Positions 24,771-47,284 of a stretch of 64,000 nucleotides of DNA are shown piece by piece. Origin of the DNA: Octopus bimaculoides. Lineage: Eukaryota. Each line of letters opens with the position of its first letter. Position 1 is the stretch's first letter. The stretch lies in contig NC_068982.1 of assembly GCF_001194135.2 (NCBI RefSeq), positions 130,266,321 to 130,330,320 of the forward strand, read 5' to 3'. The notes under the pieces were generated by a model. The model was not told the origin of the DNA, did not search any database, and worked only from the letters and a program-made list of their open reading frames with translations. Made by a program: the position numbers and the translations under genes.

Positions 24771-24809
24771 AGATGGTTTTGGAACTGGCAGTGGGATGCG
24801 ATCCAGATA
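24771..24809 (-). CDS. Mp: Multiplexin exon 14b (end of trimerisation domain, start of hinge): YLDRIPLPVPKPS
   Basis: 39 nt, phase 0/0. Acceptor ctaattatttttttcag, donor gtaagt. IQ|YLDRIPLP aligns with the vertebrate COL18A1 VQLEARTPLP segment (recalled). Confidence 0.8.
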
Positions 24810-25409
24810 CTGAAAAAAATAATTAGAAACCCCATAAAAATCATTACATTGATAAAATTTGTGAAAAATATTTGCAATTGTCTGTTAAAGGTGAAATAGT
24901 TACTATGTAATTTTCAAGAAAAATAATAATGATATATCAATGTGTGTGTTTTTAGTCAAATTTGGAATTAGATATGGCAATTGAACTGAAAGATGGTTGA
25001 CCAAGTTGATAGGACACTAGTCAAGGAGTCAGCACTTCATATTCTATGCAATTAACGAGCATTTGATTGGCTTACTGTACCAAATTCAAATTTATGTAGG
25101 ATATCTTATTCTGAAGATTTAAGTTTCATCAGCTTAACTGTATGAGTCACGTGAATCCTTGAACTTGTTTTTATGGTGTTGAAAATGCGTTACACCAAGC
25201 CAATTCAACAAGATTCATATAACACATAATAAGTACTATGATGACTATGATGTATCTCTAAAAACAAAAAATAAGCCATTCATCTATCATGTTAATAAGT
25301 TTAGTGAAGTGGTACAGTTCACTGAAAGTATTCCATAATTGATGAGAAGTTCTTTAAAATTCAAACTCGAGTTTCTTTGGGAAGAGAAATGAGAAGCCTC
25401 TCCAGTGTT

Positions 25410-28333
25410 TCACTCCTGCAATAACTACAAGAACACAAGCCTATCAGTTAGTTCCATAATAACCCAATAGTTCATTGGATATTATACACATATGTAAAAA
25501 GATGATCTTAAATACAAAGACCCTCCTGGGTGAAGAATGTACCCTGCCAGCATAGACTAGCCATTAGTGACTTTAGACTAGAGCAAGATGCAGACCAATC
25601 CAGGAAAGAAGGATTTGGAAGCTAAAGAACCCTTCACATGGTCAAAGATTTAGGGACATCCTCATCAAGAAATTTGATGAGAGGGAGGAGGAGCTACAGA
25701 CCTTGGACATAGAAGGTAGCTGGAAATTCCTATGGGATAGCTTACTGAGTGACACAGACTAAGTCTGCGGATGGTGCAAAGTCCCTTCCAGACTAGAGTA
25801 ATGTGGTAGTGGAGTAATACGGTAGACAAAGCCATTAGAGCAAAGAAACAGGCCTGGAAAGCCTGGAAGGGTGGGGGTAGCAGGGAACTGTACTAAATAG
25901 TCAGAAGGGAGACTGGGTGACAGGTATACATAGCCAAGGGCGAAGCGGAAAAGAAGAAGTTTGCCAATATCCAGTGACGTAAGGACCAAAGAACTGAAGT
26001 ATTTCGAATTGCAAGACAGTGTGTGAGAGAAAATTGTCACAAGAGAGAAATGTGTCCACATGGATGATCGTGCACTTACTTTTAATGGTTCAGAAAAGAA
26101 AGAAGCTTGGGGAAGCCATTATGAAAGACTGCTGAATGTGGAGAATGATTGGGAGGAGAGCCTACCAAATGTTGACCCAACAGAGGGACCAGCTATCCGA
26201 ATAGACAGCACACTGGTAGATAAAGCAATTAAGGGTATGAAACCAGGAAAAGCACCCCGGCCCATCAGGAATCCCTGCTGAGATGCTTAAAACATCTGGT
26301 GGTGTGGGCTATGGCCTGGTTACCCATATTGTAAACCTGGTAGTTCATAATGGAGTCATACCCAATGATTGGCGTAGCAACACCATAGTCAACTGCTACA
26401 AGGGTTTAAGGTGATGCTTTAGATAGAAATAACTACAGGGGTATTAGATTGCTGGATCAGGTGATGTAGGTCACAGAGAAGGTCATAGCCCAACTAATTA
26501 AGGAGAGAGTCTGCTTAGATGTGATGCAGTTCGGTTTTGTGCCAGGTAGAAGCACCACTGATGCTATATTCCTGGTATGGCAACTGCAGGAGAAATACCT
26601 AGTCAAAATAAACCCCAATACTTGGCTTTTGTGGACATGAAGAAGTCCTTTGACAGGGTCTCCTGATCCCTTATCTGGTGGGCAATGCGGAAACTGGGGA
26701 TTGATGAATGGTTAATAAGGGCTGTACAGGCCCTATATAGAGATACCATTAGTAAAGTTAGGGTTGGCAATGAGTATAGTGAAGAATTCTGGGTAGAATT
26801 AGGGGTCCACTAAGGATCAGCCCTCAGCACCCTCTTATTCATCATAGTCCTCCAGGCAATAACAGAGGAATTCAAGACAGGTTGCCCCTGGGAGTTCCTC
26901 TATGCTGATGATCTGGCCCTCATAGAAGAATCACTACCAGAACTAGAGAAGAAATTTCAGGTGTGGAAGCAAGGTTTAGAATCAAAGGGCCTTAGAGTCA
27001 ATGTTGCAAAGACCAAAGTTCTAGTTAGTAGGAAGGTGAACACATCACACACCCATTCAGATAGGTGACCCTGCTTGATCTGTAGACAAGGTGTAGGTAG
27101 AAACTCCATAAGATGTACCCAATGTAAGCTATGGACGCATAAGAGGTGCAGCAACATCAAAGGAAGATTAACCGGGAAGATAACTTTCATGTGCAGCAGA
27201 TGCACAGGGGCAATAAACACCACAGATGCTCAGAAAATAGATTCCATCACATGCCAGGGGGAGAAACTAGAAGTAGTTGATAGCTTCCGCTACCAAGGTG
27301 ACCAAGTCTGTAGTGGAGGTGGATGCTCAGAGAGTGTTACCACTAGAATAAGAATAGCCTGGGCAAAGTTCAGAAAGCTCCTACCCCTACTGGCAACAAA
27401 GGGCCTCTCGCTCAGAGTGAAAGGTAGATTGCACGATGCATGTGTGCGAACTGACATGCTTCACAGCAGTGAAACATGGGCCATAACTGCTGAAGACATG
27501 GGTAGGCTCGAAAGAAACGAAGCTAGCATAAATCGCTGGATGTGTAATGTGAGTGTGCACACATGACAGAGGGTAAACACCCTGAGAGAAATGTTGGACA
27601 TAAGAAGCATCAGATGTGGCGTGCATGAGAAATATTTGCATTGATATGGTCATGTACTACAGGTGGATGAAGAGATCTGCTTGAAGAAGTGCCACTCCCA
27701 AACAGTGGAAGGAATCCGGGGTAGAGAGAGACCCAGTAAAACATGGGATGAGATGGTGAAGCATGACCTTTGGACGTTAGGCCTCACAGAGGCAATGACA
27801 AAAGACCAAGACCTCTGGAGATATGCTGTGACTGAGAAGACCCTGCAAATAAAGTGAGTTCACAGCTGTAACCTACACCAGTGTCGTATAACAAGCCCAC
27901 TCAAAAGAAGCTTGGATCGTAGGGTGACGTGCCATGCTTGAGGAGACCTATTGAGTCAAGTACATCAAAACCAAAATCAAATGGAAATTGTAGTTGTGAT
28001 CCCCATACCAGTGGCATGTAAAAAGTACCATCTAAATGTGGCTGATGCCAGTGCCGGCTTGACTGGCTTCTGTGCCGGTGGCATGTAAAAAGCACCAACC
28101 AATCATGGTTGTTGCCAGCCCCCTCTGGCCCCTGTGTTGGTGGCATGTAAAAGGCACCCACTACACTCTCAGAGTGGTTGGCATTAGGAAGGGCATCCAG
28201 CTGTAGAAACACTGCCAGATCAGACTGGAGCCTAGTGCAGCCTCCTGGTTTCCCAGACCCCAGTCAAACAGTCCAACCCATGCCAGCATAGAAAATGGGC
28301 ATTAAACGATGATGATTATGATGGTGATGATGA
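25410..28333 (+). mobile_element. RTE-clade LINE, 5'-truncated and degenerate (end of endonuclease, RT, PHD finger, 3'UTR, (GAT)n tail)
   Basis: RT motifs MQFGFVPGRST, GVH-GSALS and LLYADDL with stops and frameshifts. C4HC3 finger in ORF 27075..27566. Ends ccatgccagcat...ttaaacgatgatgat. Confidence 0.93.
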
Positions 28334-29009
28334 TTCTTCTGACTTAAAAAAGGCATTCATTCAAACAGTGCCTACAAATTTTATCACAAAATATATTGTA
28401 AGAATGGAATTAAACTCAAGAATAGAAAAAAGCTAAGAGAAATAGCTGAAAACACCTTGTATGTCAGCAATACTGAAACAAATTCAACTTATTATATACT
28501 AAAACTCAGTAATCTTGGTTATGTCTTGAAATGCATTTGCAAAAACATAACTAGCCACAAATCATTCACCACTAATAACATAATCACTCATGCAAATGTA
28601 AAAAGCACAGTTTATAAATTTTTAAGATCACTTGTAATTTCTAATGACATCCTCAATCTTGCTTACATGATAGTAAATATCTTTCTGTTGCTATGTGGAA
28701 GGCGAAGACAATGAATTCTGATGAGTGGTAAGTATGATGAAACTAGTTAGCTCAATAAGCATTTGATGCTACTAAAAGCTATATGGTTTGATAACAGAGC
28801 TTAATTTCATAGTAAAAATAAGAATACCTTTACTAAACATATACATAGATGGGTAGGTCTCCAATAGTTTCAACAATAAGGATTCAGTTACATGATTAAC
28901 TGAATTATTTGCTCATTGAGTTAGTATGTAAGTGGGTTGACAGTTCACAGAAATGTGTACTCTTAACATAATTTTCATATAGAATATGCATGTATCTTTC
29001 AGCTATAGA

Positions 29010-29180
29010 TGCAATCCACTTGACAAGCTTCCACAGTTTTCACCTAAATAATTTCACTCACAAGACATGGGTTGGCTTAAGGCTGCAAAAAATGATATTT
29101 ACCTAAGATAACATGCTGTGGGATTGAACCCAGCACTTTGTGGTTGCAACACAGACTTCTTAAACATTTGGCCATACTGA
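29010..29180 (-). mobile_element. Degenerate SINE 5' half (family A/C head)
   Basis: Reverse complement resembles the A/C head (gggattgaaccc; cactcacaag). Confidence 0.5.
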
Positions 29181-31134
29181 GTTTATATAATGTACAGATA
29201 ATACTCCTTGTACATATCTATTCATCATCACATTATATCAGTAATCTTGTAGTTTACCTAAATTTATGAAACTTGCACAAATAGCCTCAAATATATATAT
29301 GAATGATGGGTGGGGGCAGGAAAGAATTGTAACATGTGGCATTCATGTAATGTATAAACAATTTGTAAACACAATACAAAATATTGTATGAGAGTTTATA
29401 TCACAACAAACAAAAATGTCTCTGGAGTACACAAAGAGAAAGGCTAGCAGTTAGCCAAAGGAAAAACAGCATGCCACATTTAATAAAAAAAATAGATATC
29501 AAACATTTAAATAACATCTGGTAGTGTAAAATGATTACATAGAAGAAAAATAAGCGAACGGCAAGAATGTTTTAAAATATATTCAGTAAAAATGCTTTTA
29601 AAAATAGATAAGTTGAAGCAAAAGAAACACCAGAAACCAAATTTACATCAGCATGCCTTGTATTTGTTAGTGGTAATATATCAAAGCTATATTTTAAAAG
29701 TTTGCAAACACACACGTACATCATCATCATTCTCTTCATTATCAACAGTACCTTTTATAAAGTATTTGATACAAAGGAAGAATCCAGTTGTGGAAACTAT
29801 GCCAAAAATGTAATGTATAAGCAAGAATTATTTTGTTTGTTTTTTTAGCTGTTTAGGAAAGCATGAACTCCATATAAGAACTGATCTGAACCATGACAAT
29901 CTGCCTGCTCCATAGCATTACAGTATGGTAAGCAGACATATAATGAAGAGGGTGGCAATGATGACATGTATGATGATGATGATGATGATGATGATGATAT
30001 ATACACACACACACATATATATACATAAATATCCATACATGCCTACACACACACACATATATATATATACATATATACATATATTTATTTATATATGTAT
30101 ATGTGTGTATATATANNNNNNNNNNNNNNNNNNNNNNNNNNNNNNNNNNNNNNNNNNNNNNNNNNNNNNNNNNNNNNNNNNNNNNNNNNNNNNNNNNNNN
30201 NNNNNNNNNNNNNNNNNNNNNNNNNNNNNNNNNNNNNNNNNNNNNNNNNNNNNNNNNNNNNNNNNNNNNNNNNNNNNNNNNNNNNNNNNNNNNNNNNNNN
30301 NNNNNNNNNNNNNNNNNNNNNNNNNNNNNNNNNNNNNNNNNNNNNNNNNNNNNNNNNNNNNNNNNNNNNNNNNNNNNNNNNNNNNNNNNNNNNNNNNNNN
30401 NNNNNNNNNNNNNNNNNNNNNNNNNNNNNNNNNNNNNNNNNNNNNNNNNNNNNNNNNNNNNNNNNNNNNNNNNNNNNNNNNNNNNNNNNNNNNNNNNNNN
30501 NNNNNNNNNNNNNNNNNNNNNNNNNNNNNNNNNNNNNNNNNNNNNNNNNNNNNNNNNNNNNNNNNNNNNNNNNNNNNNNNNNNNNNNNNNNNNNNNNNNN
30601 NNNNNNNNNNNNNNNNNNNNNNNNNNNNNNNNNNNNNNNNNNNNNNNNNNNNNNNNNNNNNNNNNNNNNNNNNNNNNNNNNNNNNNNNNNNNNNNNNNNN
30701 NNNNNNNNNNNNNNNNNNNNNNNNNNNNNNNNNNNNNNNNNNNNNNNNNNNNNNNNNNNNNNNNNNNNNNNNNNNNNNNNNNNNNNNNNNNNNNNNNNNN
30801 NNNNNNNNNNNNNNNNNNNNNNNNNNNNNNNNNNNNNNNNNNNNNNNNNNNNNNNNNNNNNNNNNNNNNNNNNNNNNNNNNNNNNNNNNNNNNNNNNNNN
30901 NNNNNNNNNNNNNNNNNNNNNNNNNNNNNNNNNNNNNNNNNNNNNNNNNNNNNNNNNNNNNNNNNNNNNNNNNNNNNNNNNNNNNNNNNNNNNNNNNNNN
31001 NNNNNNNNNNNNNNNNNNNNTGGAAACCTCAATAATAGAACCCCTGGAAGAAATCCTTATATATATATCTAATATATTTCATTTTAAAAATCAACGGAAA
31101 TAACTCATTCTCCCCTGGAAGGGATCCTTATATA

Positions 31135-32078
31135 TAGTATCAGCAGTTCCAGAAATTCTGACCTGGGAGCTAGAACCTAGAACTTGAACCTTATCCTGGA
31201 ATATCTGTAGAGCTCGGCGAGGATGTCCTGCAAACCCTAGTGGAACAAACTCCCATCGCAACTGTTGAGGAACTAGCAGAGGAGCTTGGATTTGGTCATT
31301 CAACCATTCATCAACACCTGCATGTCATCGGAAAAGTCAGCAAATTGGGTCAATGGGTTCCCCACAAACTTTCCACATCTAATCACGTGCAGAGATTAAA
31401 TGTGTACTTTTCTTTGCTGTCACGCCTCACAAATGAACCTTTTTGGACCAAATAGTGACTGTTTATGAGAAATTAGGTCTCTATAAAAATGTTAAGCACC
31501 AAAGACAGTGGGTAGGGAAAGGAGAAACACTGGCACTCCAGGCTAAAGAAGGTCTTCACCGACATAAAGTGTTGTTATCTGTTTGGTGGGATATGAAAGG
31601 TTTAGTCCACTTTGAACTTTTAAACCCAAACCAAATGATAACAAAGGAAATCTACTGTGAGCAGCTTGAATGGCTTCCTTGGTTTCAAGACAAAAGGTGT
31701 TCTTCCATCAGGTTAATGCTCAGCCACATACAATGAGGATGACATTCCAAAGGCTGGAGCAGTTTGAATGGGAAACAATGCCCCACCCGCCATATATGCT
31801 GGACATTGCCCCATCTGATTATCATTTATTCTGTAGTCTTCAAAATCATTTGGATGGAAAAAAAATGAATTCTGTAGATGAGGTCAGAACAGCACTGGAG
31901 GAGTATTTTTCCTCATGGATAAGCGAATTTTGGAGGAGAGGCCTTGCAAGTCTACCAGACAGATTGATGAGCATTGTAGAAAATGAAGGAGAGTATATTT
32001 TAGATTAAAAAGGAACTTTATTTATCTTAATTTTGAAAAATAAAAGAAGTGTAAAAACACTGCATTATTTATGGGATA
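31135..32078 (+). mobile_element. Mariner transposase pseudogene (5' end lost next to a gap)
   Basis: WVPHKL, IVT-x-EK, VWWDMKG, FHQ-x-N, HPPY..DIAPSDYHLF and GEYILD motifs split over three frames. Confidence 0.9.
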
Positions 32079-32190
32079 CATACATGTATGTACGTATGTA
32101 TGAATGCATGTATGTGTGTATGTATGTATGTATGTATGTTTGTATGTATGTGTGTATGTTTGTATGTATGTGTGTATGTATGTATGTATG

Positions 32191-32240
<50 letters not shown>

Positions 32241-32499
32241 TATATATAAATATACATATATATTGTTGATATACTAATAAGAAAAGTAGTTAATCAAAAG
32301 AAAGTATTAAATACTGTAGGTAGGGTAGAGTAATATTTCTGAAAAGTTGAGTTTAAGAGTCTCTACTCAGAATTTTTCATTTCTGATCCTGATCAGAATT
32401 GAGAATAAGAAATGGTGAGAAGTAATTTCCTAAAACTTTGTTTTCCTCAATGGAAATGTATTGCTTACAATAATTCTTAACCAACCTATCAAGTCAGCC

Positions 32500-33166
32500 T
32501 GGAGCTTTTGTAATTTTGTGTTAAAAGAGCTCTGTGACTTTTTTTTATTGATACTTGGTAAATTCAAGCAATGTTGCTGTGTTAATTTTTTATGAAGTTT
32601 ACCTAATCTACCAAATCTACTACAGTAACTCTTGGAACACTTCACCAGTATTTTGGTGAACATTATTTTAAGTGAAACAACAATGTCTTTGAGAGGTGAT
32701 CTTATTTTAAAATTGAGTCCTGTTGCAGATGATCAACACCCAGGCTGACAAGTCACAATCAAAATGCTAGAAAATGCACAAGAAATTTGGGAATCCATCT
32801 ATGAAGACTGTTGCCAAACAATCCACTAGCCCCTCACATTGTTGGAATCAGTTATGTAGCCTGTGAAGAGATTGTTAAAGAAAATCTGCATTGTTGTGAA
32901 GTTGTTTCTTCCCTGGTTCTCCTGGCCCACTCTCTTATATCCTTGCTTTGTTTTCCAAAATAGAATTGAAATTGAAGGGGCATTATTTGGGGATGATGGA
33001 AGAATTCCAAATGGAAGATGCATTGGGATTACTGTGTATATTCTAAAGAGAAATTTTTCAAAGCAGCTGTTTCCTTCAAATAAATAATGTATGAAATACA
33101 TTATTTACAGGTATAACTGAGTACTTTGTTAAAGCCAAGTTGAGTAACTTTCTGATACTGTCTTAT
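32500..33166 (+). mobile_element. Highly decayed, internally deleted mariner
   Basis: HTH-like remnant, DDQHQ-x-DK..(RPGRP-like) segment, C-terminal remnant, right TIR gagtaactttctgatactgtcttata. Confidence 0.6.
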
Positions 33167-34186
33167 ATGTGTGTGTGTGTGTGTGTGTGGCAATATATAT
33201 GAGTGCGTTTTGTAAACAATGTGCAGATTTTTCTCTGACAGACTGCTGAATTTATCTGAATGTATCATATATTCTGTCAACAATTGAAAGATCTTTGAGG
33301 TGAAAAGGATTTCTCTCCTTATTTTAAAAGAAGATTGAATTTTTCTGTTTGCTGGAGCTATATGCTTGTTAATATCATAGTATTTTTTAGCAGTCACTTT
33401 GACCTTAATTTGTTCTGTTACATTTTAAGTTTTTTTATATTAATCAGTAGTTTTTGGTCACACTCTCTATAGAGATGAGATGCTGGAGGAGAGTCATGTA
33501 TGAGGTTGATCAGAGTCGTTTTAAGTTGAGAGAGTAAAACAGTTACCATTGTCGGAGATTTAAGTAATTCTAGATGATGTTAATCATCTCATTTAAACTG
33601 TTAGAGGAATTTTGTTTTCATATGATGGGATTAATGATTAACAATTGATGAATTTAGTGTTTTGTATGAGTTACAGAAAGAGAGTTATGGTACAGTAATT
33701 TTCTAAACAAATTAATGCTATACATAACTAGTTCATAGCATGGGTAGTAATTAAATTCTTTCTAGAAAATAATTCTAATTACTCTTTACTAAGAAGCTGT
33801 ATGTGTCTTAGCAAATTGAAAACTAAAAATGTAGTGAACACTATCAACACATAGAGTATGCTATGCTGGATCACATACAGAATCTTTGTGCAATGAGTTT
33901 GATGCTATATAATAGCCTGGACCTATTGTTCCTTGTTTGCTTTCCAGCTTGTTTCAGTATTTTGAAGTGTTTTCCACTGCCAGAAGGATAAAAATGGAGA
34001 GCTGATTGTGAGAACTAAGTCATCATGTTGAGGATGTAGATGATTTATAAATGAATAGTAAATAGTATTTGTTTGAGATTTTCATTAAGTTTTTATCACA
34101 TTAGGTTTTTCTTGTTTATTTTTACCATTTCACCAGAAGAACGCTGATAAGTGAAAGCTGAAGAAATTGAGTTGAATGCAACTTAC

Positions 34187-34210
34187 CCGGGGAAGTGCAA
34201 TGCGTCTGCT
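34187..34210 (-). CDS. Mp: Candidate 24-nt microexon (14a): SRRIALPR
   Basis: Acceptor tttgcatgtttcttttag, consensus donor gtaagt, phase 0/0, open frame. Peptide resembles the segment that follows the trimerisation domain. Confidence 0.6.
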
Positions 34211-35700
34211 CTAAAAGAAACATGCAAATTTTGTTAAAATTAATAATAGCCAAACATCAAATGCAGCATAGCATGCTGGTGAAGCAGAAAACATGAAGGG
34301 TATGAAGAATGCATCACTTGCATACAGAGATTTATTAACATTTAATTGTGACCTCAAAGATTAAAGCATTTCACATTACTTTCCATGACCTCATTCGGTT
34401 ATTTGTAAGTGAGGTATAGAGGATTAAATCAAGCCTAGCATTTTATTATTAAAACAAGTCAAATAGAATTTGTTACAAAGAAGGAAGAAAAACAATATAT
34501 TGCAATGCAGTTACTGTAACACTTTATAATCTGAGCCAAATAAGCTTAGTTTCTGATTTGATTCACTTCAATTGTATTACTAATAACTGATAGCAGTTCA
34601 ATAAAGTGTACTCTATATAAAGAAGATGTGGTTTTAGCTAGCTTCAACTGTTAACCAGTCATTAGTTCAATAAATTTTTGTTGTTATTTTACAGAAGCTT
34701 ACATTCAACAGATTTATGAGCAAATAAACTTCCATTACATCAGAAATTCTCAGCCTTTTATCATCTTGATGACTTTCCATAAATCAATAAACTTTGACAA
34801 CCCAACTCTCTTTTTTTTAATAATATTCTTATAGAGATACTATTTTTTAACAAAACATTTGTTTATAGTAAAGGTTATGTTCGAGTCCCATGGCTTATTA
34901 TCAATTGAAATCATGAACATTTTACATTCTAACCTACATTTATTTTAAAATTAAAACATTTTGCTTTGGTAGCTCTTTCAGAATTATACAGCAACACATC
35001 AGCCTGAAACTGCTGTTCAAGAAATTGAGTTCAAATCTTTTACTTCATTATACAATTTCAGCTTTTGTACAGTTTTAGAATATTTAAGGTATGTTAATCA
35101 TCTACCATAGCTATAACATTTTAGGTCACATAAATTTAATAATGGCACCTAATATTTTATTTGAGAAAAGTAAAAAAACATAGCATATCTTTATATCTAC
35201 TTTTCCACTGAAATTGTTATTTTATAGCAAGTGGTATTTTTAAAAACACATTAGTCTGAATGAAATATGCATTCTAACATGCTATCATACACATGTAATT
35301 TCATCCATTATATGAGCAATGAATTTAGTTATGAATAAATATAATTAAAATATTTGTTATATGTATTATCATTAATAAATATATTTTCATGCATTCATGC
35401 AACTATATACATTTAATTGACACACACACACACACGAAACATGAGACATGAAACATGGCTGTGATGTACAAGCATGACTGTGATGCACAGGTACAATTGT
35501 GTGTGGCTCAGAAGTCCACTTCACAGTTAAATGGCTTTGGGTTCAGTTTTGATACCTTAGTTAAATGACTTTTACTATAGCTCAGGGCCAGCTACATCTT
35601 GTGACTAAATTCTGAAACTGCAAGGAATCTTGTGATAGATACATGCATTACATACACACATGTTAGAATGTGTGTGGATATACATATATATATATATATC

Positions 35701-36972
35701 TTAAATTAGTTCTAACATCTGAGGATTTGACGGCTTCTTTTATAAATTTTTTTGACTTCTCTCTAAACTCCTCAAACCTCTCCTTTATGCATTCCCTGGA
35801 TATGTTAACAGCTCCAAGGAGAAGGAGATCCTTAAAAGACTCAAGGTTATCGACCCTTGTACCCTTTTAGCCTGGATGTTGTCTCCCTCTATACTTCCGT
35901 GCCCACTTTTCTGGCTGTCAATATCATTACTGACCACATCACATCTTTCCTTTTGTCCCCTCTTCTCCCACATCCATTTCCTCCTCCCCCTCCTCCTCTT
36001 TCTCTTTTACTTCCTCTTCCTCTTTCACCAACCTTCACCTTTTTAGCCTAACAGCCTTGGATATCTCCGATCAACCAATGTGATCCAGCCTCTCAGGCCT
36101 ACTGGACATCTCATATATGGATCAACTCAAATGCACAGTGCTTAACACCTGCCATTCATGTGTCTTCTTTTCAAGGTGCATTGCTGACATCTAAATGCTA
36201 ACCGCCTGCTGGGAAGAAGAGACCACCATACATCAAAACTTCAATGTTGACAGCAACATCAAATTAGAAATTATACTCTCAGGCAAGTCCAGAATCCTCT
36301 CTCTGATAGATTTCCAAATCAAGATCTCAAGGGAGGGTTATATTTACATGAATTTTTATAGAAAAGTAGGCAGTAGGAATCTATTTGTACATTACAAATC
36401 AGCTCTGCCCACAAGGGCCAAAATCACATATGTACAGAATGAGATGATACATATAAGAGACAGATGCAGTGATGCAACCAACAAAGCTACCAACATCAGG
36501 GCAGTTCCTCAGGAATTTAGCACACAAAGGCTATCTGCTATCTGCAGCTGGGAGGGACTCAACACTAGTCCATCACCGAGGAAAGTTCTGTAGAGGAAAA
36601 ATACCATAGAGAGCACCATGGGGGTGCACACTCATCAACTACCCTATCAAAAACATCAAAACATGCTTGAAGCCCTATGTAGTATCCAAAGTAATCTGCA
36701 GTAAATGTGGAGCATTGTACATAGAGAATATTGCTAGGAGATTACACATCCAAATAAAGAAGCATATGAATATGGACTCTTCAATAGAAAGCACTTTTGG
36801 AAGTGCTAAACCCAGAATTTCAGTTTCCATCAGGGGAAACAAATGCAACAGGAGCAATCTCAGAATTATGGAAGCCCTCCTTATAAACGAATTGAGACCA
36901 GCCACGAACAACAGAAAAGAACTACATGAAGTAAACTGGTTGCTAAAACAACATCAGTCCTTTCATCCCTAG
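35701..36972 (+). mobile_element. Degenerate Penelope-like element (RT and GIY-YIG remnants)
   Basis: SLDVVSLYTSVP (PLE RT motif), YRK..RNLFVHYKSALP, and YVVSKVICSKCGALYIENIARRL (GIY-YIG-like), with frameshifts and stops. Confidence 0.8.
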
Positions 36973-36981
36973 ACTATATAT

Positions 36982-37268
36982 GAGGGCACATGGCTTAGTG
37001 GTTAGAGTGTTGCACTCATGATTGCTCTTATGATTCCTGGACTATTTAATGCATTCTGTTCTTGAGTAAAATATTTAATTTCACATTGCTCTGAGATACT
37101 TCAACACCTGACATCTTGTACACTATGCATCTGTTCAGGCAACATCGATTTCATAAAGTGAGTGAACCAATGTTCAGTGCATACATGTGATCACTGTAAG
37201 GAAATCATTTGTGCAGGTCATTCAACAAAAACTGAACAGTCATACATTGTCTTCAACAGAAGATTCTA
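36982..37268 (+). mobile_element. tRNA-derived SINE (family D)
   Basis: Pol III A-box-like head tggcttagtggttagagtgttgcactc followed by a non-tRNA body. Confidence 0.55.
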
Positions 37269-37904
37269 TACATAAATGTGTGTGTGTGTGTGGGGTGTGT
37301 GTGTACATGTGTTTGTATGTGCAGATGTGCATTAATGGTGGTAATCCATAGTATTTGTCTCTGGCTAAGTAAAATGGTGGTGTGATGTTTACAGTCAACA
37401 TCAGCATTGTGACTGACCACTCTGCATTTTAAAAGACTTGTGGAAATAAAAAGTTCCTTACTTGAAAAACAGGTAAAATTTGGTGACAGGAAGAATATCC
37501 AGTTATAAATTCCTGTTTCAAATAAGTTTCTGTCCAACTCATGCTGGCATTTGAAAATGGATATTAAAAGAATGACATGTCCATGTGTGTGTGTGTTTGC
37601 TTGGATGTACAAAGAGATATACAAGTATCTGAAGTTTCATTCCTTTGTTATTTTCAGTTACCTATTTCTATTACCTTCCTTACAGTTCTGGAGAAAGCGA
37701 TAGTAACTGGAGCATAAAGTAATGATAGACTGAATCCCCAGTGTCAATTGCATGTATTTAAGTCATCAAAATATACAAGGTATCAATGACCAGCTACAAT
37801 AACTAAAATTTTGTTACTTGACTATTGAACTATCATATATGTAACAATCTGTAATTAATATAATAAATCAATATGATAAAATGTCAAAAATGTTTAAACT
37901 TATA

Positions 37905-38128
37905 TCTAATATTGGCTTCAAATTTTTGTACAAGGCTGGCAATTTCAGGGGAGGAGGCAAGTCAATTACCTCAACCTCAGTGCTCAGCTAATACTTATTT
38001 TGGTGACCCCAAAAAAATGAAAGGTGAAGTCGACCTCTGGAGAATTTGAACGTAGAACGTGAAGATGGATGAAATGTTGCTAAACATTTTGCCTGCCACA
38101 GTAATGATTCTGACGGCTCACTCCCTTA
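37905..38128 (-). mobile_element. SINE family B, minus strand
   Basis: Reverse complement of family B (gtcgacctctggagaatttgaac; atgaaaggtgaagtcgac). Confidence 0.75.
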
Positions 38129-38967
38129 AACATATACCTAATATTACAATTTAATGTCAACCTTTTTAAAATGAGCATTAAATATCAACATATTCAGTAG
38201 AACATGTGCACTGCAAATTTTCCAACATACTTGGTTCCAAACACAAACTGGATTATACATTATGCTAGATTAAAAAATATCATGTAATAGTAATTCTGAG
38301 CAAAGTTCTTGAAGATGGGTACCAGGTTATAAATAACATTTTTACAATGAATTCTTCAAGATGCATTTTTGTTTATTCACTAGTAATAAATCAAAGTTGA
38401 TAACATTCTTTCAACCCTTCAACTATAATAATATATTAAGGCACTATTTAAGGGCACAATTTAAAGCAAAATTTAATGCCACAACTTAACCACTGAACAA
38501 TTGGGCATCCAGCAATGTAAGAGGTATATATTTACATGTTCCTCTTTTATATTATGACATTGCATTCTTTGCAGAGAAGATAAGCTATCTATCTATTTGC
38601 TCTTCACAGAAAGAGGGTCCTTAAGGGGTTAGCACATGAAGTTACATTTAATTTTAAACATTTGTATTTTTATATTATCATAGATAGGTGGTAGGAGAAT
38701 ATTTTTGCCTTCATGACATGTCACTAGTGAATAAAAGAATGTGTATCATGAATGCTTGTTACCAAAAATGTTATTAGTAATGATCACAGAAATTTGCCTC
38801 ATCATAATCATCTTGAGATTAAAAGAATTACTACAACATCAGTTGCTGGAAAATTGGTAGTGTACCTGTATATCATTTCCCTAGTTAGTAAAGTTAATTA
38901 AAAACTGAATGTAATATTACAAAATAGAAATAATATCCTTCAGAATCAGTGTCTAACTTATACTTAC

Positions 38968-39096
38968 TTGGATTTCTGCCCATGCATCTTTCAGTCGAAT
39001 TAATAATAGTTCCTTATCATGAACAAAAGCTATACTTCCAACAGGGATAGTTAGAGCAACATCTTGAAGTTCTCCCATATTGCGATAAGTTGCAAT
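38968..39096 (-). CDS. Mp: Multiplexin exon 13, NC1 trimerisation domain: IATYRNMGELQDVALTIPVGSIAFVHDKELLLIRLKDAWAEIQ
   Basis: 129 nt, phase 0/0. Acceptor tttatttacatag, donor gtaagt. Pattern P-x-G-x-I-A-F-V ... L-x-I-R ... W-x-x-I-Q matches the collagen XV/XVIII trimerisation domain. Confidence 0.92.
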
Positions 39097-40411: not shown

Positions 40412-40573
40412 CGCATGTGAAGCAGAATAAGTCTGATCATTAATAGTGCTGGAACCACCATATGAATGTTGTTGAGGTCCTGGAGGGCCTGGAGGCCCAC
40501 GGGGACCTGGTCTTCCCGGAATTGATACTCCTGGAATTCCAGGAATACCCCGGCCTGTACTTCCTTTTTCTCC
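40412..40573 (-). CDS. Mp: Multiplexin exon 12 (last COL domain): GEKGSTGRGIPGIPGVSIPGRPGPRGPPGPPGPQQHSYGGSSTINDQTYSASHA
   Basis: 162 nt, phase 0/0. Acceptor tttcttttag, donor gtaagc. Confidence 0.93.
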
Positions 40574-41568
40574 CTAAAAGAAAAATATGCAGAAAAATAT
40601 CCATAAAAATTAATATCTATCATGATAAAAATCATGATTTTTCAACCAATAAGGAAGTTTGTTACTCAGCCAAGAATAGCACATGGGAAAACGATGGTAA
40701 ATTTCCTTGTCTTAGTTGAAATTTGCCATTAACATACTAGATTGCATTTTCAAATACTAGACCTCTGATCTTTGGGTTTCTGATCAGCCACTTTCATGTA
40801 GCATACTTGCTAAAATATAACGAATTGAAGCTAACTTAACAATAACAGCAATGTCTAATATTTTGAATCAAAAAGGTGCCTCTACATAAAGGGTCAGTCA
40901 CAGGTGGACCACTGAATACTTCAGAACTTTTCTAAAAAAATTTTCAAAATATAATACATTTGTCGGCCACAAATTTAATGTTTTTGTGGAACTGTTGATA
41001 GTTTTTAGATAGAATTTTTCATCATGAATTAATTTTTGCATACATAAACATCACCAATGTTAACAATAGGGTTACATGGGAATATTTTTGTAAGATATGA
41101 TGTAACATATATGTGGATCATGGGCAAATATAAGTAAGAATGACAAGTGAGCCATTAGAAGACAAAGTTGTTGATACTCAATATACATAATTACTTGTTT
41201 ACCTAGAAATCTTCTAACTGATGAACTACAATCTTAAAAAAAGAAAGACACAGTGGATAATGTAGTCATAAATATGATATTTTGAAAAAGAAAAAAAAAT
41301 GTGAACAGAAACCATATCCCACATCCACAAAAAAATAAACTAGTAAGGGTTAGAATGTTGTTGATCATATATCTTTTTGATTATAGCTGCTCTGGGACTA
41401 AATACCTGCAATATGTTTTCTTCAGTTCTCAAATTGATATTACACAGATAGAGAAAGAGCAATATGTCATATTGCTCTTTCTCTATCTCTCTGTCTCCTT
41501 GCTCAGCATCCTGAAATTCTTTTGAGTTTACTATTCAAATTTTAATAGTTTCAAAAGAAATTCAAATA

Positions 41569-42433
41569 TGAGGTGATATCAAAATATTCCCAGACTAGTT
41601 CTATAGCATGCCAAAAGATGGCAGCACATGGTTGCTTGTGCAGCGAGAGCTAGCAGTGACCTTCATGAAGCAGCGTGCTGAGTGACATCATTGTGTTTAC
41701 TTTACAAGTTGTGAAATTTGTGGTTTTTGTGACCATATGTATTCTGTTAGCTATTTTGTCAAAGAGTCAATGTGAAATTTTGCATTAAACTTCAGAAGTC
41801 TGCTAGAGAGAGATTGAGCATTCTTCAGCAAGCTTACAGCAATGAAGCAATAGGTTGTATGCAATGTTTCAAGTGACATGGACACTTCAAAAGTGAAAGA
41901 ACATCCCTGGAAGGTGATGAGCAATCTGAAAGACCTGCAATGAGCATCACCATGGAGAAAATTCATCAGCTTATGCATGGGGATCATCAGAGGACAATCA
42001 ATGACATTTTGAAGCATTTGAGGGAAGTCATTAGACCAAACCATGAAGCATGAAGAATTGGATTCTTCACGATGACAATGTACCCTATTATCAAGCTCTC
42101 CTCACTTGTGAGTTTCTCACCAAAAACAACATGGTATTGCTTCTGCACCTACCCTATTCACCAGATTTAGCACTTGCAGACTTCCATCTCTTCCCCAAGA
42201 TGTAAATGCAGTTGAAAGGTTGCTATTTTAATACCGTTGTTGCGATCCAGAGTGAATCACAAAAATTCCTTGATTTGCATATAGAAAACAACTTCCAGGT
42301 TGGATTCCATAAGTGGCAGGAACACTGACACTGATGTATTACTGTGCAAGGTGACTATTTTAAAGGAGAACTTAGCTAAAGTAAAGTATATTTTATTAAA
42401 CAATTAGTCATGGAACTTTTTGATACCACCTTG
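41569..42433 (+). mobile_element. Non-autonomous mariner, same family as 17591-18535, both TIRs present
   Basis: TIRs tgaggtgatatcaaaatattcccagactagtt / aattagtcatggaactttttgataccaccttg, TA on both sides. HLPYSPDLALADFHLF remnant. Confidence 0.88.
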
Positions 42434-42844
42434 TAGAATTCATTATATTTTACTATGTTTATAGACTGAACTATATATAATGGAAAGATTTCTTAGCTCT
42501 TAGAAGTAGTGGTTGGTTTTTAACCTTCTCTTTGTTCCCTTTCCCTGTAAATACTCTGCTTTCTACTGATTCAACTGTACAATCATTCATCAAATAAATA
42601 ACATATTCTGAATCAATTTGTGTATCTCTTTTAAACACATTTCTTAAAATATTACTTTTAGCATTTGAAGAAAAATATAATATAATGCTGAAGTAACAAT
42701 GCTCACTTAATAGACATTCTTTCCACAGTCTTATAACTAACAACCTCTGTCTCACTAATTAAACATCTCAACCAATAAGCTATTATGTCTTTACTTTATA
42801 TTGAGGGACAATATGTTAAGGAAACACTTTAGAAACAAACTAAC

Positions 42845-42985
42845 CATTTCTCCTTTCTGTCCTTTTTGTCTATAAAGTCTATATGCATCTCCATGTCCAT
42901 TTGAGCCAGCATAACTACCGGTATTTGGTGGTCCTGGTGGTCCTGGGGGCCCTGGTGGTCCTGGTAGTCCAGCATTACCTTTATA
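42845..42985 (-). CDS. Mp: Multiplexin exon 11: YKGNAGLPGPPGPPGPPGPPNTGSYAGSNGHGDAYRLYRQKGQKGEM
   Basis: 141 nt, phase 0/0. Acceptor aatttcag, donor gttagt. Matches ORF 42791..43093. Confidence 0.92.
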
Positions 42986-43061
42986 CTGAAATTCAGACAG
43001 AAAATTAATGTATGACTCACTAATGGGAAATAAGCATTTAAAAACAAACAAATATATACAT

Positions 43062-43400
43062 AGGGTCTTGGGTTTAGTTCCACTGTGTAGCACATTGAGC
43101 AGTGTCTTCTATTATAGCCAACCAAAGCCTTGTGAATAGATGGAAGCTGAAAGATGCCTGTCGAAAATATATGTGTATGTGAGTGTATTTGTGTGAATCC
43201 TTGTTTTAACATCATATGATGATTGTAAATGAACATTACCATCATACAAGCAATGTTGTTTGTTTCCATGAAGAAATGTGTCTGGTAATGGGGAAAATAT
43301 TACCTTGCTTGGAAACAGGTGAAGGTTGATGACAGGAAGGGCATTTGACTACAGAAAATCTACCTCAACAACTTACATCTAACCATGCAAGCATGGTTAA
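43062..43400 (+). mobile_element. SINE family C (A-like head, RTE-derived 3' tail)
   Basis: Head similar to family A. 3' part aatattaccttgcttggaaacagg..gacaggaagggcat..ccatgcaagcatgg shares the LINE tail. Confidence 0.7.
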
Positions 43401-43664
43401 TTAGCCAAACAGTTAATTGTAACATTACTGATTTTTCAATCAATGTTTTGTTCTATTGATGACAACAAATTTTATCTTTGCGTGTAGTTAATAAAAATGT
43501 ACATCTAGCATCTCCACCACTGCAGCTGGATGATTTTCACTTGCTACTGATTTATTTTTGTGTTATTTAAACAGTACATCATTAAGTGCTATTTTCTCTG
43601 GATGAACTGCAGTTAATTGGGGTTTTCCCTGATATTTACATTAAGTATGACACAGATTGTTGTA

Positions 43665-43735
<71 letters not shown>

Positions 43736-43783
43736 TTCTCTATCTATCTATCTATTTCTCTACCTATCTATCTATTTCTCTAC

Positions 43784-43870
<87 letters not shown>
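43665..43870. repeat. (TATC)n microsatellite with tatttctc variants, running into a gap
   Basis: Read directly. Similar arrays at 7273-7375 and 16590-16670. Confidence 0.95.
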
Positions 43871-43871
<1 letters not shown>

Positions 43872-44220
43872 ATATATATATNNNNNNNNNNNNNNNNNNN
43901 NNNNNNNNNNNNNNNNNNNNNNNNNNNNNNNNNNNNNNNNNNNNNNNNNNNNNNNNNNNNNNNNNNNNNNNNNNNNNNNNNNNNNNNNNNNNNNNNNNNN
44001 NNNNNNNNNNNNNNNNNNNNNNNNNNNNNNNNNNNNNNNNNNNNNNNNNNNNNNNNNNNNNNNNNNNNNNNNNNNNNNNNNNNNNNNNNNNNNNNNNNNN
44101 NNNNNNNNNNNNNNNNNNNNNNNNNNNNNNNNNNNNNNNNNNNNNNNNNNNNNNNNNNNNNNNNNNNNNNNNNNNNNCACATATTACTGAAATACAAGCA
44201 CTGTTTATTTTTCATTCTAT

Positions 44221-44267
<47 letters not shown>

Positions 44268-45201
44268 TTTTTAACATCCAATTTCCATGCTTGCATATGT
44301 GTAGTGTGTGTTAGGGGTGATATTAGGTTCACTTGATGACAGATACAATGCAGCAGTGTTGACAAGATATAAATTTCCAACCTCTTTGCTTTCTGCTGTT
44401 ATATCATATAACTAATGTTCCCTCATTAGTGTATGTCATCTTCCTAAGTGACATTTACTTATATTACAAGACATCTAAACTGAATTATGCTCTCAGTGGT
44501 TTAAATCCACCTTATGATATGCCCACTTTGATTACAATGAATATATAAAGATGTGTGCATGAAAGAAAAGATTTTAAACATTAAGAAAATTTAGCTAATT
44601 CAATAAATACCATGGTGTACATGTTCATAATTGTGATTTTTACAGCATAACATGTATGGAATAATAAAAGTATGTAAAGACTCTATGTGACTATAAAATA
44701 TTAATCATACTTCTTTGAGAATCTGTCATATCCCAGTGTTATCATATCTACCTTTTAAATTAAGCATATCTGGTAACTCCTACTTGTAAGAATTCATTTT
44801 TTTTTCTAGTTCCAAAATCTCAACAGATGGAAAAAACCAAATGGTAAGATGATATTGAACTGGAATTGTATTTGTCTAGCTAGTAACATGATTTGAGCCT
44901 TTAATGATACTAAAGCAATTACATAATGGAAGAATCACTTTAACTATTACAAAAACATACAAAACTATTAAATTCACTTTTCATTTATTCCATGAAATAC
45001 TGTATCAGTAACTAAGTTGCAGTTACATGCCAAAAAGTTTAATGCCTCAATAACTAAATATGAAATGAATTTAATAGAATTTTTGATTTTGAAAGTCATA
45101 AAATGGTTATTTCCCAATGATACTGATCTTGTCTTTTATTTAGAATTCTGCTGGACTAACTAAGTTGGCTATATTGGCATATATACGCAGTTAATACTTA
45201 C

Positions 45202-45275
45202 ATATCTTTTATCAAATATACTAGCCTCTGACTTGTCACCTTTGTCTCCTTTTTCTCCCTTTTCTCCTCTGTAAA
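45202..45275 (-). CDS. Mp: Multiplexin exon 10: (I/V)YRGEKGEKGDKGDKSEASIFDKRY
   Basis: 74 nt, phase 1/0. Acceptor ttctcatttcag, donor gtaagt. Confidence 0.9.
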
Positions 45276-46353: not shown

Positions 46354-46471
46354 TTCTTTCTGTATCTCCAGAACCTGTATTTATTATCACTCCTGATGAC
46401 GGAGAAGAAAGTGGGCCAGGTGGGCCAGGTGGGCCAGGAGGTCCTGAACGGCCTGTATAACCACGTTCACC
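46354..46471 (-). CDS. Mp: Multiplexin exon 9: GERGYTGRSGPPGPPGPPGPLSSPSSGVIINTGSGDTER (+1 nt)
   Basis: Acceptor attttacag. The next exon needs a phase-1 donor. Two fit: aa|gtaaaa (exon ends 46354) or cag|gttctg (ends 46375), so the 3' boundary is ambiguous. Confidence 0.85.
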
Positions 46472-46947
46472 CTGTAAAATACAATGCATATTATTATTAA
46501 CTGTTTCTGCAGTACCAATTCATTAGGGTTCAATGACATCTAAGAATATGGAGTGATAAGAAAATAATTGAAAATAAAAGGCTGTATTCATTAAAGAGAA
46601 ACTAATATACACAGGCTGCTTATCAAGTGCTTGAGAACTCAAAGATCTAGTGATCAAAGATCTACAAATAATGCTATTCACTTTGTCAATTTAGACTATA
46701 CTTTATCGTTCGTTCAGCAATTTAGCAGTGATCCACTCTTCTTAATTCTGATCTATATCATCCCATGTTTTAGCATTTAACCTATGTGATTTTCATTTTA
46801 AAGTTGGCAAGGTGTTTACTTAGGAAGATATTACTATTATATTGACGAAGCTTAGAAAATTTGTTGATGCTCTTTCACTGACTTAAGTTAAACCTGATTA
46901 CAATAGTTGCCAAAAAATGTGATACATATCTAAAGAGTAGCTCTTAC

Positions 46948-47103: not shown

Positions 47104-47284
47104 CTGTAAGGTGGAAGTTCAATAAATATTATTTTTATCATTATTAAACCAATTTTTAGATGTGTTTGTAATTTCTTTTAAATCAGAATTGTTCTTTTTA
47201 TTTTATTCATGTATCTTGTGTCTAATTTAATAAACTAATACTTTAGAACTACAATGCACTTTATTTAATTGTAACTATTAGACA

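What the first reader, a model, noticed from the sequence alone, without database searches (positions are those of the whole stretch)
24771..39096. Two similar tiny exons could each complete the trimerisation domain (possible mutually exclusive pair)
Seen: after ...DAWAEIQ (ends 38968) come two phase-0 exons with consensus splice sites, 9.4 kb apart: SRRIALPR (34187-34210) and YLDRIPLPVPKPS (24771-24809). They share R-I-x-L-P. Established (recalled): human COL18A1 reads RKVQLEARTPLPR and COL15A1 KKLQLGELIPIP at this point, the end of the trimerisation domain. Both exons resemble this one segment. Inference: an exon duplication giving alternative ends to the chain-assembly module (mutually exclusive), or a cassette that doubles it. 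Either could alter homo/heterotrimer choice or hinge accessibility. About 34 kb of intron is spent on some 50 codons here, as often seen around regulated exons. I am not aware of such splicing in multiplexin NC1.
Basis: partly seen in the sequence, partly recalled or inferred. Interest (0 to 1): 0.75.

Follow-up and report, generated by a model that had tools for sequence, protein, structure and literature searches.

The report
Collagen trimerisation tail exon plus look-alike
In this collagen XV/XVIII-type gene the 39-base exon is the ordinary, anciently conserved exon that finishes the chain-assembly domain, while the similar 24-base candidate upstream is an unproven extra, and nothing in the sequence would make the two mutually exclusive.

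Summary
On the minus strand, after the exon ending ...DAWAEIQ (39096-38968), there are two phase-0 AG/GT-bounded open segments: Ea SRRIALPR (34210-34187) and Eb YLDRIPLPVPKPS (24809-24771). The N gap at 30116-31020 is intronic and touches neither.

The gene is a multiplexin: G-X-Y exons, trimerisation domain, microexon hinge, endostatin domain.

Eb is the conserved tail exon. It puts I-P-L-P in exact register with COL15, COL18, shrimp and nemertean tails. In shrimp and fish loci, a single tail exon follows a trimerisation exon that ends at the same phase-0 position.

Ea is extra. It is one residue out of register, lacks the first Pro and adds nothing to matches with solved structures. It is not clearly chance either. 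It has the best splice-site score among short in-frame candidates, and splice quality plus similarity arose in 0.5-4% of simulations (up to 24% with lax sites).

None of the three sequence-checkable ways of enforcing mutual exclusivity applies: both exons are multiples of three, both are U2 GT-AG, and the intron is about 9.4 kb. No RNA docking structure stands out.

No transcript or orthologous intron could be reached.

My estimates: Ea unused 0.5, optional cassette 0.22, both constitutive 0.1, mutually exclusive 0.08.

The parts
38968..39096 (-). Trimerisation-domain exon, 129 nt, phase 0-0. Reads IATYRN...DAWAEIQ.
   Evidence: Matches Pfam PF20010 positions 2-43 of 49 at 25-28.7 bits, above the 23.8 cut-off. 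It has the same length (129 nt) and the same 3' boundary as the fish col15a1b-like exon, and the same 3' boundary as the shrimp exon.
34187..34210 (-). Ea: candidate 24-nt microexon SRRIALPR, status unproven.
   Evidence: Sites are ttcttttag| and CGG|gtaagt. Its PWM splice score of 10.4 is the highest of all 15-60 nt phase-0 candidates on this strand. It shares R-I-x-L-P with Eb and is unique in the window. It is out of register with the family tail by one residue and gives no gain against solved domains.
30116..31020 (.). Assembly gap (905 N) inside the Ea-Eb intron.
   Evidence: One side is bordered by a (CA/TA)n microsatellite. No exon-like frame lies at either edge, and it touches no candidate exon.
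24771..24809 (-). Eb: conserved tail exon of the trimerisation domain, 39 nt, YLDRIPLPVPKPS.
   Evidence: With Eb, the alignment to COL15 domain 3n3f runs ungapped through IPLP (22.1 bits, E 1.3e-3), and COL18 domain 3hon also matches. The register is identical to the Tubulanus, crustacean and vertebrate tails. It is positionally homologous to the exon that follows the trimerisation exon in shrimp and fish.
14487..14510 (-). Ec: candidate hinge microexon, 24 nt, ETTTVLTS.
   Evidence: Sites are cccacag| and |gtacgt, with splice score 8.7. Together with Ed it resembles the gastropod hinge TTTEPPPVPLIPPPNY.
5075..5149 (-). Ed: hinge exon, 75 nt, TPKPPEIHVLPPNLDKEKYQRNRKV.
   Evidence: It has the same length as the fish exon immediately before the first endostatin exon. 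PDB endostatin alignments start inside it, at ...NRKV.
3349..3546 (-). Endostatin exon 1, 198 nt.
   Evidence: tblastn hit to human endostatin. Pfam PF06482 scores E 7.9e-59 over the assembled domain. The fish exon has the same 198-nt length.
2483..2598 (-). Endostatin exon 2, 116 nt.
1923..2130 (-). Endostatin exon 3, with the stop codon.
40472..60721 (-). Upstream interrupted collagenous (G-X-Y) exons of the same gene.
   Evidence: Twelve G-X-Y runs on the minus strand with AG/GT borders.

Best explanation
This is the C-terminal (NC1) part of a multiplexin collagen gene on the minus strand.

The 129-nt exon and the 39-nt exon Eb together encode the complete trimerisation domain. The exon junction after ...W-A-E-I-Q is an ancient phase-0 intron position. 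Eb supplies the conserved tail ...I-P-L-P. The hinge that follows is built from further small phase-0 exons (24 and 75 nt) and leads into the endostatin domain.

Ea is a look-alike in the 14-kb intron between the two. It is an open, in-frame 24-nt segment with very good splice signals. It is not needed to complete the domain and is most likely not part of the main mRNA, that is, a pseudo-exon. Either it is never spliced, or it is spliced only at noise level.

Shown: Eb's homology and the conserved exon plan. Inferred: that Ea is unused.
For: - Gene identity: G-X-Y exons, PF20010 and PF06482, and endostatin structures at E 1e-42 to 1e-47.
- Eb is canonical: ungapped match to 3n3f through IPLP (22.1 bits) plus 3hon, against 16.5 bits and no 3hon match with Ea.
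- The family tail x-[LM]-G-x-x-[IV]-P-[LIV]-P is in register with Q-Y-L-D-R-I-P-L-P.
- The shrimp locus has ...GWQYVS|gtaagt followed by MGSVIPLP....
- The fish locus has exons of 129 nt, then a tail exon, then 75 nt and 198 nt. The window has 129, 75 and 198 nt at the matching places.
- Ea is out of register by one residue and lacks the first Pro.
- The Ea and Eb flanks share nothing.
- Decoys with equal or better splice scores do exist. There are two distinct ones on the non-coding plus strand in 64 kb.
- With lenient splice thresholds, a similar candidate arises by chance in 13-24% of simulations.
- A 24-nt exon is hard to define without dedicated enhancers (established knowledge of microexon splicing).
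Against: - Ea has the best combined splice score of all short phase-0 candidates on the coding strand. It scores higher than most real exons of this gene.
- At that stringency, the chance of such a candidate also resembling the tail is 0.5-1.5%.
- R-[IVL]-x-L-P occurs nowhere else in 35 kb in three frames.
- Optional small segments directly flanking the trimerisation domain exist in RefSeq isoforms of a nemertean multiplexin. A real optional exon here would therefore not be odd.
- No transcript or comparative data were available, so non-use is an inference from priors.
Confidence: 0.5

Rival explanations
1. Ea is a real, regulated cassette microexon. In some tissues it inserts eight residues (SRRIALPR) between the last strand of the trimerisation domain and the conserved I-P-L-P tail, and Eb is always included. 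This would change the geometry or protease accessibility at the start of the hinge, not the choice of chains.
For: - It has the top splice score and a perfect donor CGG|GTAAGT.
- A UGC sits at -16 to -14 from the acceptor, where SRRM3/4-dependent microexons typically carry one. This is a single instance read and is weak.
- The length of 24 nt is a multiple of three.
- Joint chance of splice quality and similarity is 0.5-4%.
- Tubulanus polymorphus isoforms X1-X4 differ by an optional 9-residue segment right after the tail and a 6-residue one right before the domain.
Against: - None of the roughly 60 tails inspected has an insertion at this point.
- No conservation or expression data are available.
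- One UGC in a 30-nt stretch is expected by chance about a third of the time.
Confidence: 0.22
2. Both exons are constitutive. This lineage carries a tandemly doubled tail (...AEIQ-SRRIALPR-YLDRIPLPVPKPS...).
For: Ea's splice sites are stronger than Eb's, so if Eb is recognised Ea might be too. All junctions stay in frame.
Against: - With Ea inserted, alignments to the Pfam, family and PDB profiles all stop at ...AEIQ, and the score drops slightly (27.4 against 28.7 bits; 32.5 against 37.3 bits).
- No other multiplexin inspected shows such an insertion.
- It would displace the conserved I-P-L-P by eight residues from the last strand.
Confidence: 0.1
3. Ea and Eb are a mutually exclusive pair from an exon duplication, and they give alternative ends to the trimerisation domain.
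For: The two are neighbouring exons of the same phase. They share R-I-x-L-P, and their lengths differ by only 5 codons. Their resemblance is unlikely by chance at strict splice thresholds.
Against: - No enforcing feature is present. Both lengths are divisible by three, so there is no frameshift or NMD on joint inclusion. Both are U2 GT-AG. The intron is 9.4 kb, against the <50 bp needed for steric exclusion. These criteria come from PMC5740500.
- No docking/selector pairing beyond 10-13 nt was found.
- The flanks are unrelated.
- Ea, at 8 residues, is below the 10-residue minimum used in systematic predictions of mutually exclusive exons.
- Ea fits the domain tail worse than Eb.
Confidence: 0.08

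Closest known systems
Human COL15A1 and COL18A1 trimerisation domains (PDB 3N3F; 3HON/3HSH)
   Same: The layout is the same, about 50 residues ending in ...W/F-x-x-[ILV]-Q-L-x-x-x-[IT]-P-[LI]-P. The window's domain with Eb aligns without gaps to both. The crystallised constructs end one residue after the P-x-P motif.
   Different: Sequence identity is low (22 and 17 bits). In the window the tail sits on its own 39-nt exon, and a second tail-like candidate lies upstream.
Fish col15a1b-like gene (Xenotaenia resolanae, locus L002) and shrimp multiplexin (Penaeus japonicus, locus L001)
   Same: The trimerisation exon ends at the same phase-0 position, one residue after W-x-x-[IV]. A single exon beginning with the tail follows it. 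In the fish, the 129-, 75- and 198-nt exon lengths are identical to the window's.
   Different: The tail exon is longer there (99 nt in the fish, about 123 nt in the shrimp) and carries part of the hinge. The window splits this into 39 + 24 nt and has much longer introns. I did not search those introns for an Ea-like candidate.
Tubulanus polymorphus LOC141915322 isoforms X1-X4 (XP_074662908-911)
   Same: It is the best full-length relative found, 42% identical over NC1. Its predicted isoforms differ by an optional 9-residue segment (ADSEALRLT) immediately after the tail ...VPLPPRPQ and by a 6-residue segment just before the domain. That is alternative splicing at the edges of the trimerisation domain.
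   Different: The optional segment lies after the conserved tail, not before it, and does not resemble the tail. These are computed RefSeq models that I have not checked against reads.
Fish col18a1 database models with and without the tail exon
   Same: P0184 has ...LRQVMLGEYSPFFRELENEV..., whereas P0076 has ...LRQVMENEV.... P0175 has ...FRKIQLGPYIALPPDQG..., whereas P0211 jumps from ...FRQIQ to a distant hinge exon. So the tail is a separable small exon in vertebrate COL18-type genes too.
   Different: The models come from different species and pipelines. The differences may be annotation misses of a microexon rather than real isoforms.
Mutually exclusive exon pairs from tandem exon duplication (human atlas, PMC5740500)
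   Same: Neighbouring exons of the same phase with some sequence similarity.
   Different: None of the three sequence-checkable enforcing mechanisms is met. Similarity is limited to five residues, and Ea is shorter than the minimum used there.

Membership tests
Multiplexin collagen (type XV/XVIII-like) | Interrupted collagenous G-X-Y domains upstream of NC1 | tested here: met
   Twelve G-X-Y runs lie on the minus strand between 60721 and 40472, with splice-site borders.
Multiplexin collagen (type XV/XVIII-like) | Multiplexin trimerisation domain (Pfam PF20010) at the start of NC1 | tested here: met
   25-28.7 bits against a 23.8-bit cut-off. PDB 3n3f matches at E 1.3e-3 when Eb is included.
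Multiplexin collagen (type XV/XVIII-like) | C-terminal endostatin/restin domain (PF06482) | tested here: met
   E 7.9e-59 over profile positions 1-167 of 170. PDB 1dy2, 1dy0, 1koe and 1bnl match at E 1e-42 to 1e-47.
Multiplexin collagen (type XV/XVIII-like) | Conserved NC1 exon plan | tested here: met
   The 129-nt trimerisation exon, 75-nt hinge exon and 198-nt endostatin exon match the fish locus in length. The intron position matches the shrimp locus.
Mutually exclusive exon pair | Adjacent exons of the same phase and reading frame | tested here: met
   Both exons are phase 0-0, and no exon has been detected between them. A gap in the intron could hide one.
Mutually exclusive exon pair | Sequence homology and similar length | tested here: inconclusive
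   Similarity is limited to R-I-x-L-P: 4 of 5 residues, 11 of 15 nt, BLOSUM62 local score 19. The lengths are 8 and 13 residues. The flanks are unrelated. Chance probability is 0.5-24%, depending on splice stringency.
Mutually exclusive exon pair | A feature that prevents joint inclusion: frameshift/NMD, U2/U12 incompatibility, or steric hindrance below 50 bp | tested here: not met
   Both 24 and 39 nt are divisible by 3, and the joint product is open. Both exons are GT-AG with polypyrimidine tracts. The intron is about 9.4 kb. The criteria are those of PMC5740500.
Mutually exclusive exon pair | Competing RNA structures (docking and selector sites) | tested here: inconclusive
   Only 10-13 nt complementarities link a common site to both exon neighbourhoods, which is what chance gives in 24 kb of AT-rich intron. 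Without orthologues, conservation cannot be judged.
Mutually exclusive exon pair | Transcripts contain one and only one of the two | not testable with these tools
   No transcript data for this or a close species could be reached.
Regulated cassette microexon (27 nt or less) | Length 3-27 nt, frame-preserving, strong 5' splice site, UGC near the 3' splice site | tested here: met
   Ea is 24 nt with donor CGG|GTAAGT (donor score 7.3, the best in the gene). A UGC sits at -16 to -14. The UGC is a single weak instance.
Regulated cassette microexon (27 nt or less) | Tissue-regulated inclusion and cross-species conservation | not testable with these tools
   No RNA data and no orthologous intron were available.

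The most novel reading that the evidence does not exclude
Ea and Eb are paralogous microexons used alternatively. The same multiplexin gene would then make two chain-assembly modules with different C-terminal tails. This would be the first case of alternative splicing inside a collagen trimerisation domain, with possible effects on trimer stability, chain selection or endostatin release.
Probability: 0.08. Interest if true: 0.6.

Novelty: new member of a known kind. Interest (0 to 1): 0.25.

Why it matters
The trimerisation domain decides how multiplexin chains register and fold. The hinge behind it controls the release of endostatin-type fragments. A spliced variant that alters the junction between the two would be a new way of regulating either.

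What the evidence actually shows is more ordinary. This is a well-conserved multiplexin NC1 exon plan in which the domain's tail is a separate small exon, as in fish and shrimp.

The useful outcomes are these:
- The gene model is TD - Eb - Ec - Ed - endostatin, with Ea left out unless transcript evidence supports it.
- The trimerisation-exon boundary and several exon lengths are conserved between vertebrates, arthropods and this lophotrochozoan-like gene.
- One precisely defined 24-nt candidate remains that a single RNA-seq junction count can settle.

Tried and rejected
1. **Protein word-index searches.** I searched with the spliced NC1. I also searched with a concatenation of intronic ORFs around the trimerisation exon, Ea and Eb, plus a positive control. 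Both gave zero hits. Not even the 95%-identical ORF P0001, which the exhaustive search had found, was returned. No orthologous locus of a close relative could therefore be fetched.
2. **Profile search with alignment A1.** It returned 79 NC1 proteins. None came from a close relative, and the mollusc hits were endostatin-only fragments.
3. **Exact look-ups.** Look-ups of the window's own ORFs and of the Littorina and Nucella models found nothing on record.
4. **JGI metagenome scan with six peptide patterns.** No relative was found.
5. **Profile scoring.** Pfam PF20010 and a home-made profile of 33 tails hardly distinguish the constructs, because the tail is weakly weighted. The home-made profile even scores TD+Ec highest (38.7 bits, against 37.3 for TD+Eb). 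I therefore relied on register, the PDB comparison and exon homology.
6. **Search for traces of duplication.** The 500 nt either side of Ea and of Eb share nothing but microsatellite, and Ea is not part of a repeat.
7. **Docking/selector search.** Only chance-level matches appeared.
8. **Structure prediction of the variants.** Spliced constructs are not accepted by the remote tools, and no trimer modelling is on offer, so I did not attempt it.
9. **Primary structure papers.** PMC3048824 and PMC3048825 are not held.
10. **Full-text search for the peptides.** No paper contains them.
I could not verify it. The nearest named relatives are gastropods (48-51% over endostatin) and a nemertean.

Full report
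**What is there**

The window carries a multiplexin (collagen XV/XVIII-type) gene on the minus strand.
- Twelve G-X-Y runs with splice-site borders lie between 60721 and 40472.
- A 129-nt phase-0 exon at 39096-38968 encodes IATYRNMGELQDVALTIPVGSIAFVHDKELLLIRLKDAWAEIQ. It matches the Pfam multiplexin trimerisation domain PF20010 at positions 2-43 of 49, above the curated cut-off.
- Three exons at 3546-3349, 2598-2483 and 2130-1923 encode an endostatin domain. It scores PF06482 at E 7.9e-59 and matches PDB endostatin/restin structures at E 1e-42 to 1e-47.

About 35.4 kb lie between the trimerisation exon and the first endostatin exon, 3.2 kb of it assembly gaps. This stretch holds four small AG/GT-bounded phase-0 open segments:

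| Name | Coordinates | Length | Peptide |
|---|---|---|---|
| Ea | 34210-34187 | 24 nt | SRRIALPR |
| Eb | 24809-24771 | 39 nt | YLDRIPLPVPKPS |
| Ec | 14510-14487 | 24 nt | ETTTVLTS |
| Ed | 5149-5075 | 75 nt | TPKPPEIHVLPPNLDKEKYQRNRKV |

**The gap**

The 905-N gap at 30116-31020 lies wholly inside the Ea-Eb intron. It is 3.2 kb from Ea and 5.3 kb from Eb. A (CA/TA)n microsatellite borders one side, which is a typical cause of an assembly break. No exon-like frame reaches either edge.

The gap does not touch any reading frame. It does mean that the 9.4 kb intron length is an estimate and that a further tiny exon could be hidden. The trimerisation exon and Ea lie on one contig. Eb, Ec and Ed (with the endostatin exons) lie on three further contigs. 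All are in the order and orientation that the protein requires.

**Eb is the conserved tail exon**

An exhaustive HMMER search with endostatin exon 1 and a profile search gave about 60 multiplexin NC1 sequences that contain the trimerisation domain.

After the conserved G-W-x-x-[IVL], many of them read x-[LM]-G-x-[LIVF]-[IVL]-P-[LIV]-P. This holds for vertebrate COL15 and COL18, several crustaceans and the nemertean Tubulanus. Other members, many insects among them, diverge here. Examples:
- Tubulanus: I-LLGETVPLPP
- Shrimps: V-SMGSVIPLPT
- COL15: L-QLGELIPIP
- COL18: V-QLEARTPLPR

Joining the trimerisation exon directly to Eb gives I-QYLDRIPLPV. The I-P-L-P then sits in exactly the same register with no gap.

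Against solved structures:
- TD+Eb aligns without gaps to the COL15 domain 3n3f through IPLP (22.1 bits, E 1.3e-3). It also finds the COL18 domain 3hon.
- TD+Ea scores 16.5 bits. The alignment stops three residues after the junction, and 3hon is lost.

Both crystallised constructs end one residue after the P-x-P motif. The recalled human sequences are also right.

**The exon plan is ancient and has one tail exon**
- In Penaeus japonicus (locus L001), the trimerisation exon ends ...GWQYVS|gtaagt, one residue after W-x-x-V in phase 0, as in the window. The next exon, 2.5 kb on, begins MGSVIPLPTTT....
- In a fish col15a1b-like gene (Xenotaenia resolanae, locus L002), the trimerisation exon is 129 nt and ends ...GWRKIP|gt. 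The next exon begins LGELIHNG.... It is followed by a 75-nt exon and a 198-nt first endostatin exon.
- The window has 129, 75 (Ed) and 198 nt at the corresponding places.
- Gastropod hinge sequences (TTTEPPPVPLIPPPNY...) resemble Ec+Ed.

The canonical mRNA is therefore TD - Eb - Ec - Ed - endostatin. Ea is an extra element with no counterpart in these plans.

**How unusual is Ea?**

In Ea's favour:
- With generic splice-site matrices, Ea scores 10.4. This is the best of all 15-60 nt phase-0 candidates on the coding strand of the whole window, and above most real exons of the gene. Those range from 1.0 to 12.7, and Eb scores only 3.3.
- R-[IVL]-x-L-P occurs only at Ea and Eb in all three frames of the 35 kb.
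- In order-3 Markov simulations of the hinge introns, a candidate with Ea's similarity to Eb or to the human tails (BLOSUM62 local score >=19) appears in only 0.5% of runs at Ea's splice score. The figures are 1.5% at >=7 and 3.8% at >=5 (one search gave 0 of 300).

Against it:
- With thresholds that would still admit the real Eb, the figure rises to 13-24%.
- The non-coding plus strand holds two distinct decoys with splice scores at or above Ea's in 64 kb.
- Similarity is confined to five residues (11 of 15 nt), and the flanks are unrelated.
- Ea is one residue out of register with the family tail and lacks its first proline.
- No inspected multiplexin has an insertion at this point.

I weighed a prior of a few per cent for an unannotated extra exon in this intron against these likelihoods. 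My estimate is that Ea is a real exon in some mode with probability 0.35-0.45.

**Mutual exclusivity**

The three sequence-checkable enforcing mechanisms listed in the human atlas of mutually exclusive exons are U2/U12 incompatibility, steric hindrance (<50 bp) and frame incompatibility (PMC5740500). Competing RNA structure is a fourth mechanism, described in other work found in the same literature search.
- Both exons have GT-AG sites with polypyrimidine tracts.
- The intron between them is about 9.4 kb.
- Both lengths are multiples of three, and every combination of Ea, Eb, Ec and Ed stays open.
- A search for a site complementary to sequences near both exons found only 10-13 nt matches, as chance predicts in 24 kb of AT-rich intron.

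If Ea is used at all, a cassette that adds eight residues ahead of the tail is more likely than an either/or choice. Its 24-nt length, perfect donor and a UGC at -16 to -14 fit the general look of SRRM-dependent microexons. One UGC is weak evidence.

**Comparable cases**
- RefSeq isoforms X1-X4 of the Tubulanus polymorphus multiplexin differ by an optional 9-residue segment directly after the tail and a 6-residue one directly before the domain.
- Fish col18a1 models exist with and without the tail exon. These come from different species and may be annotation misses.

Small optional pieces around the trimerisation domain are thus already present in databases, though I found no paper describing them.

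**What could not be done**

No transcript or orthologous intron from a close relative was reachable.
- The only close relative seen is an 82-residue genomic ORF, 95% identical, from a Logan assembly (P0001).
- The word-index protein search did not return it, so its contig could not be fetched.
- The organism was not identified.

**Verdict**

Eb is an ordinary, deeply conserved exon. Ea is a well-defined but unproven candidate. The mutually exclusive model is the least likely of the live options.

| Status of Ea | Estimate |
|---|---|
| Unused | 0.5 |
| Optional cassette | 0.22 |
| Both exons constitutive | 0.1 |
| Mutually exclusive | 0.08 |
| Other (hidden exons in gaps, assembly problems) | remainder |

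Noticed in passing
window 39096-38968, 5149-5075, 3546-3349; L002 3776-3904, 5787-5861, 6010-6207: Three NC1 exons have exactly the same lengths (129, 75 and 198 nt) in this gene and in a fish col15a1b-like gene. The phase-0 intron after the trimerisation exon is also shared with a shrimp. This points to deep conservation of the multiplexin NC1 exon plan across bilaterians.
   Followed up: partly
proteins P0152/P0003/P0151/P0153 (Tubulanus polymorphus XP_074662908-911): Predicted isoforms differ by an optional KFPNAQ just before the trimerisation domain and an optional ADSEALRLT just after its tail. I have not checked them against reads.
   Followed up: partly
proteins P0184 vs P0076, P0175 vs P0211 (fish col18a1-type models): Some database models lack the tail microexon (LGEYSPFFREL / LGPYIALPPDQG) that others have. 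This is either real skipping or annotation that missed a microexon.
   Followed up: no
window 53301-54960, 57452-58428 (inverted), 26830-28328; fragments at 7937-8110, 4714-4771 and 44248-44296: An interspersed repeat of about 1.1-1.7 kb has copies 76-82% identical. The copy in the Ea-Eb intron carries a 163-residue ORF (27075-27566, +) with a PHD finger (Pfam E 3.6e-5). It is probably the remnant of a retroelement. Two copies contain splice-like decoys (VFLGLPLPQV...).
   Followed up: partly
window 31670-32008 (+): A 112-residue ORF (...HPPYMLDIAPSDYHLFCSLQNHL...) looks to me like the C-terminal end of a mariner/Tc1 transposase. Pfam gave no hit at E <= 0.01, so this is only a recalled resemblance.
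   Followed up: partly
window 23780-24590 and 29990-30115: Long trinucleotide microsatellite arrays start about 180 nt downstream of Eb. A (CA/TA)n array abuts the 30116 gap edge and probably caused the assembly break.
   Followed up: no
window 28690-28667 and 31204-31163 (minus strand): Two further phase-0 AG/GT candidates lie in the Ea-Eb intron: QQKDIYYH (splice score 9.4) and IFQDKVQVLGSSSQ (7.8). Neither resembles anything in the family. They are probably decoys and show how readily such candidates arise.
   Followed up: no
protein P0001 (Logan assembly, contig 1472 nt): A genomic ORF from an unnamed sequencing run is 95% identical to the ORF around endostatin exon 1 (3319-3567, -). A close relative's reads therefore exist publicly and could be mined for the Ea region.
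   Followed up: partly
The word-index protein search returned nothing for single-sequence queries. Those queries share many 5-residue words with proteins known to be in the same collection (P0001, P0003). The alignment query did work. Negative results should not be read as absence.
   Followed up: no
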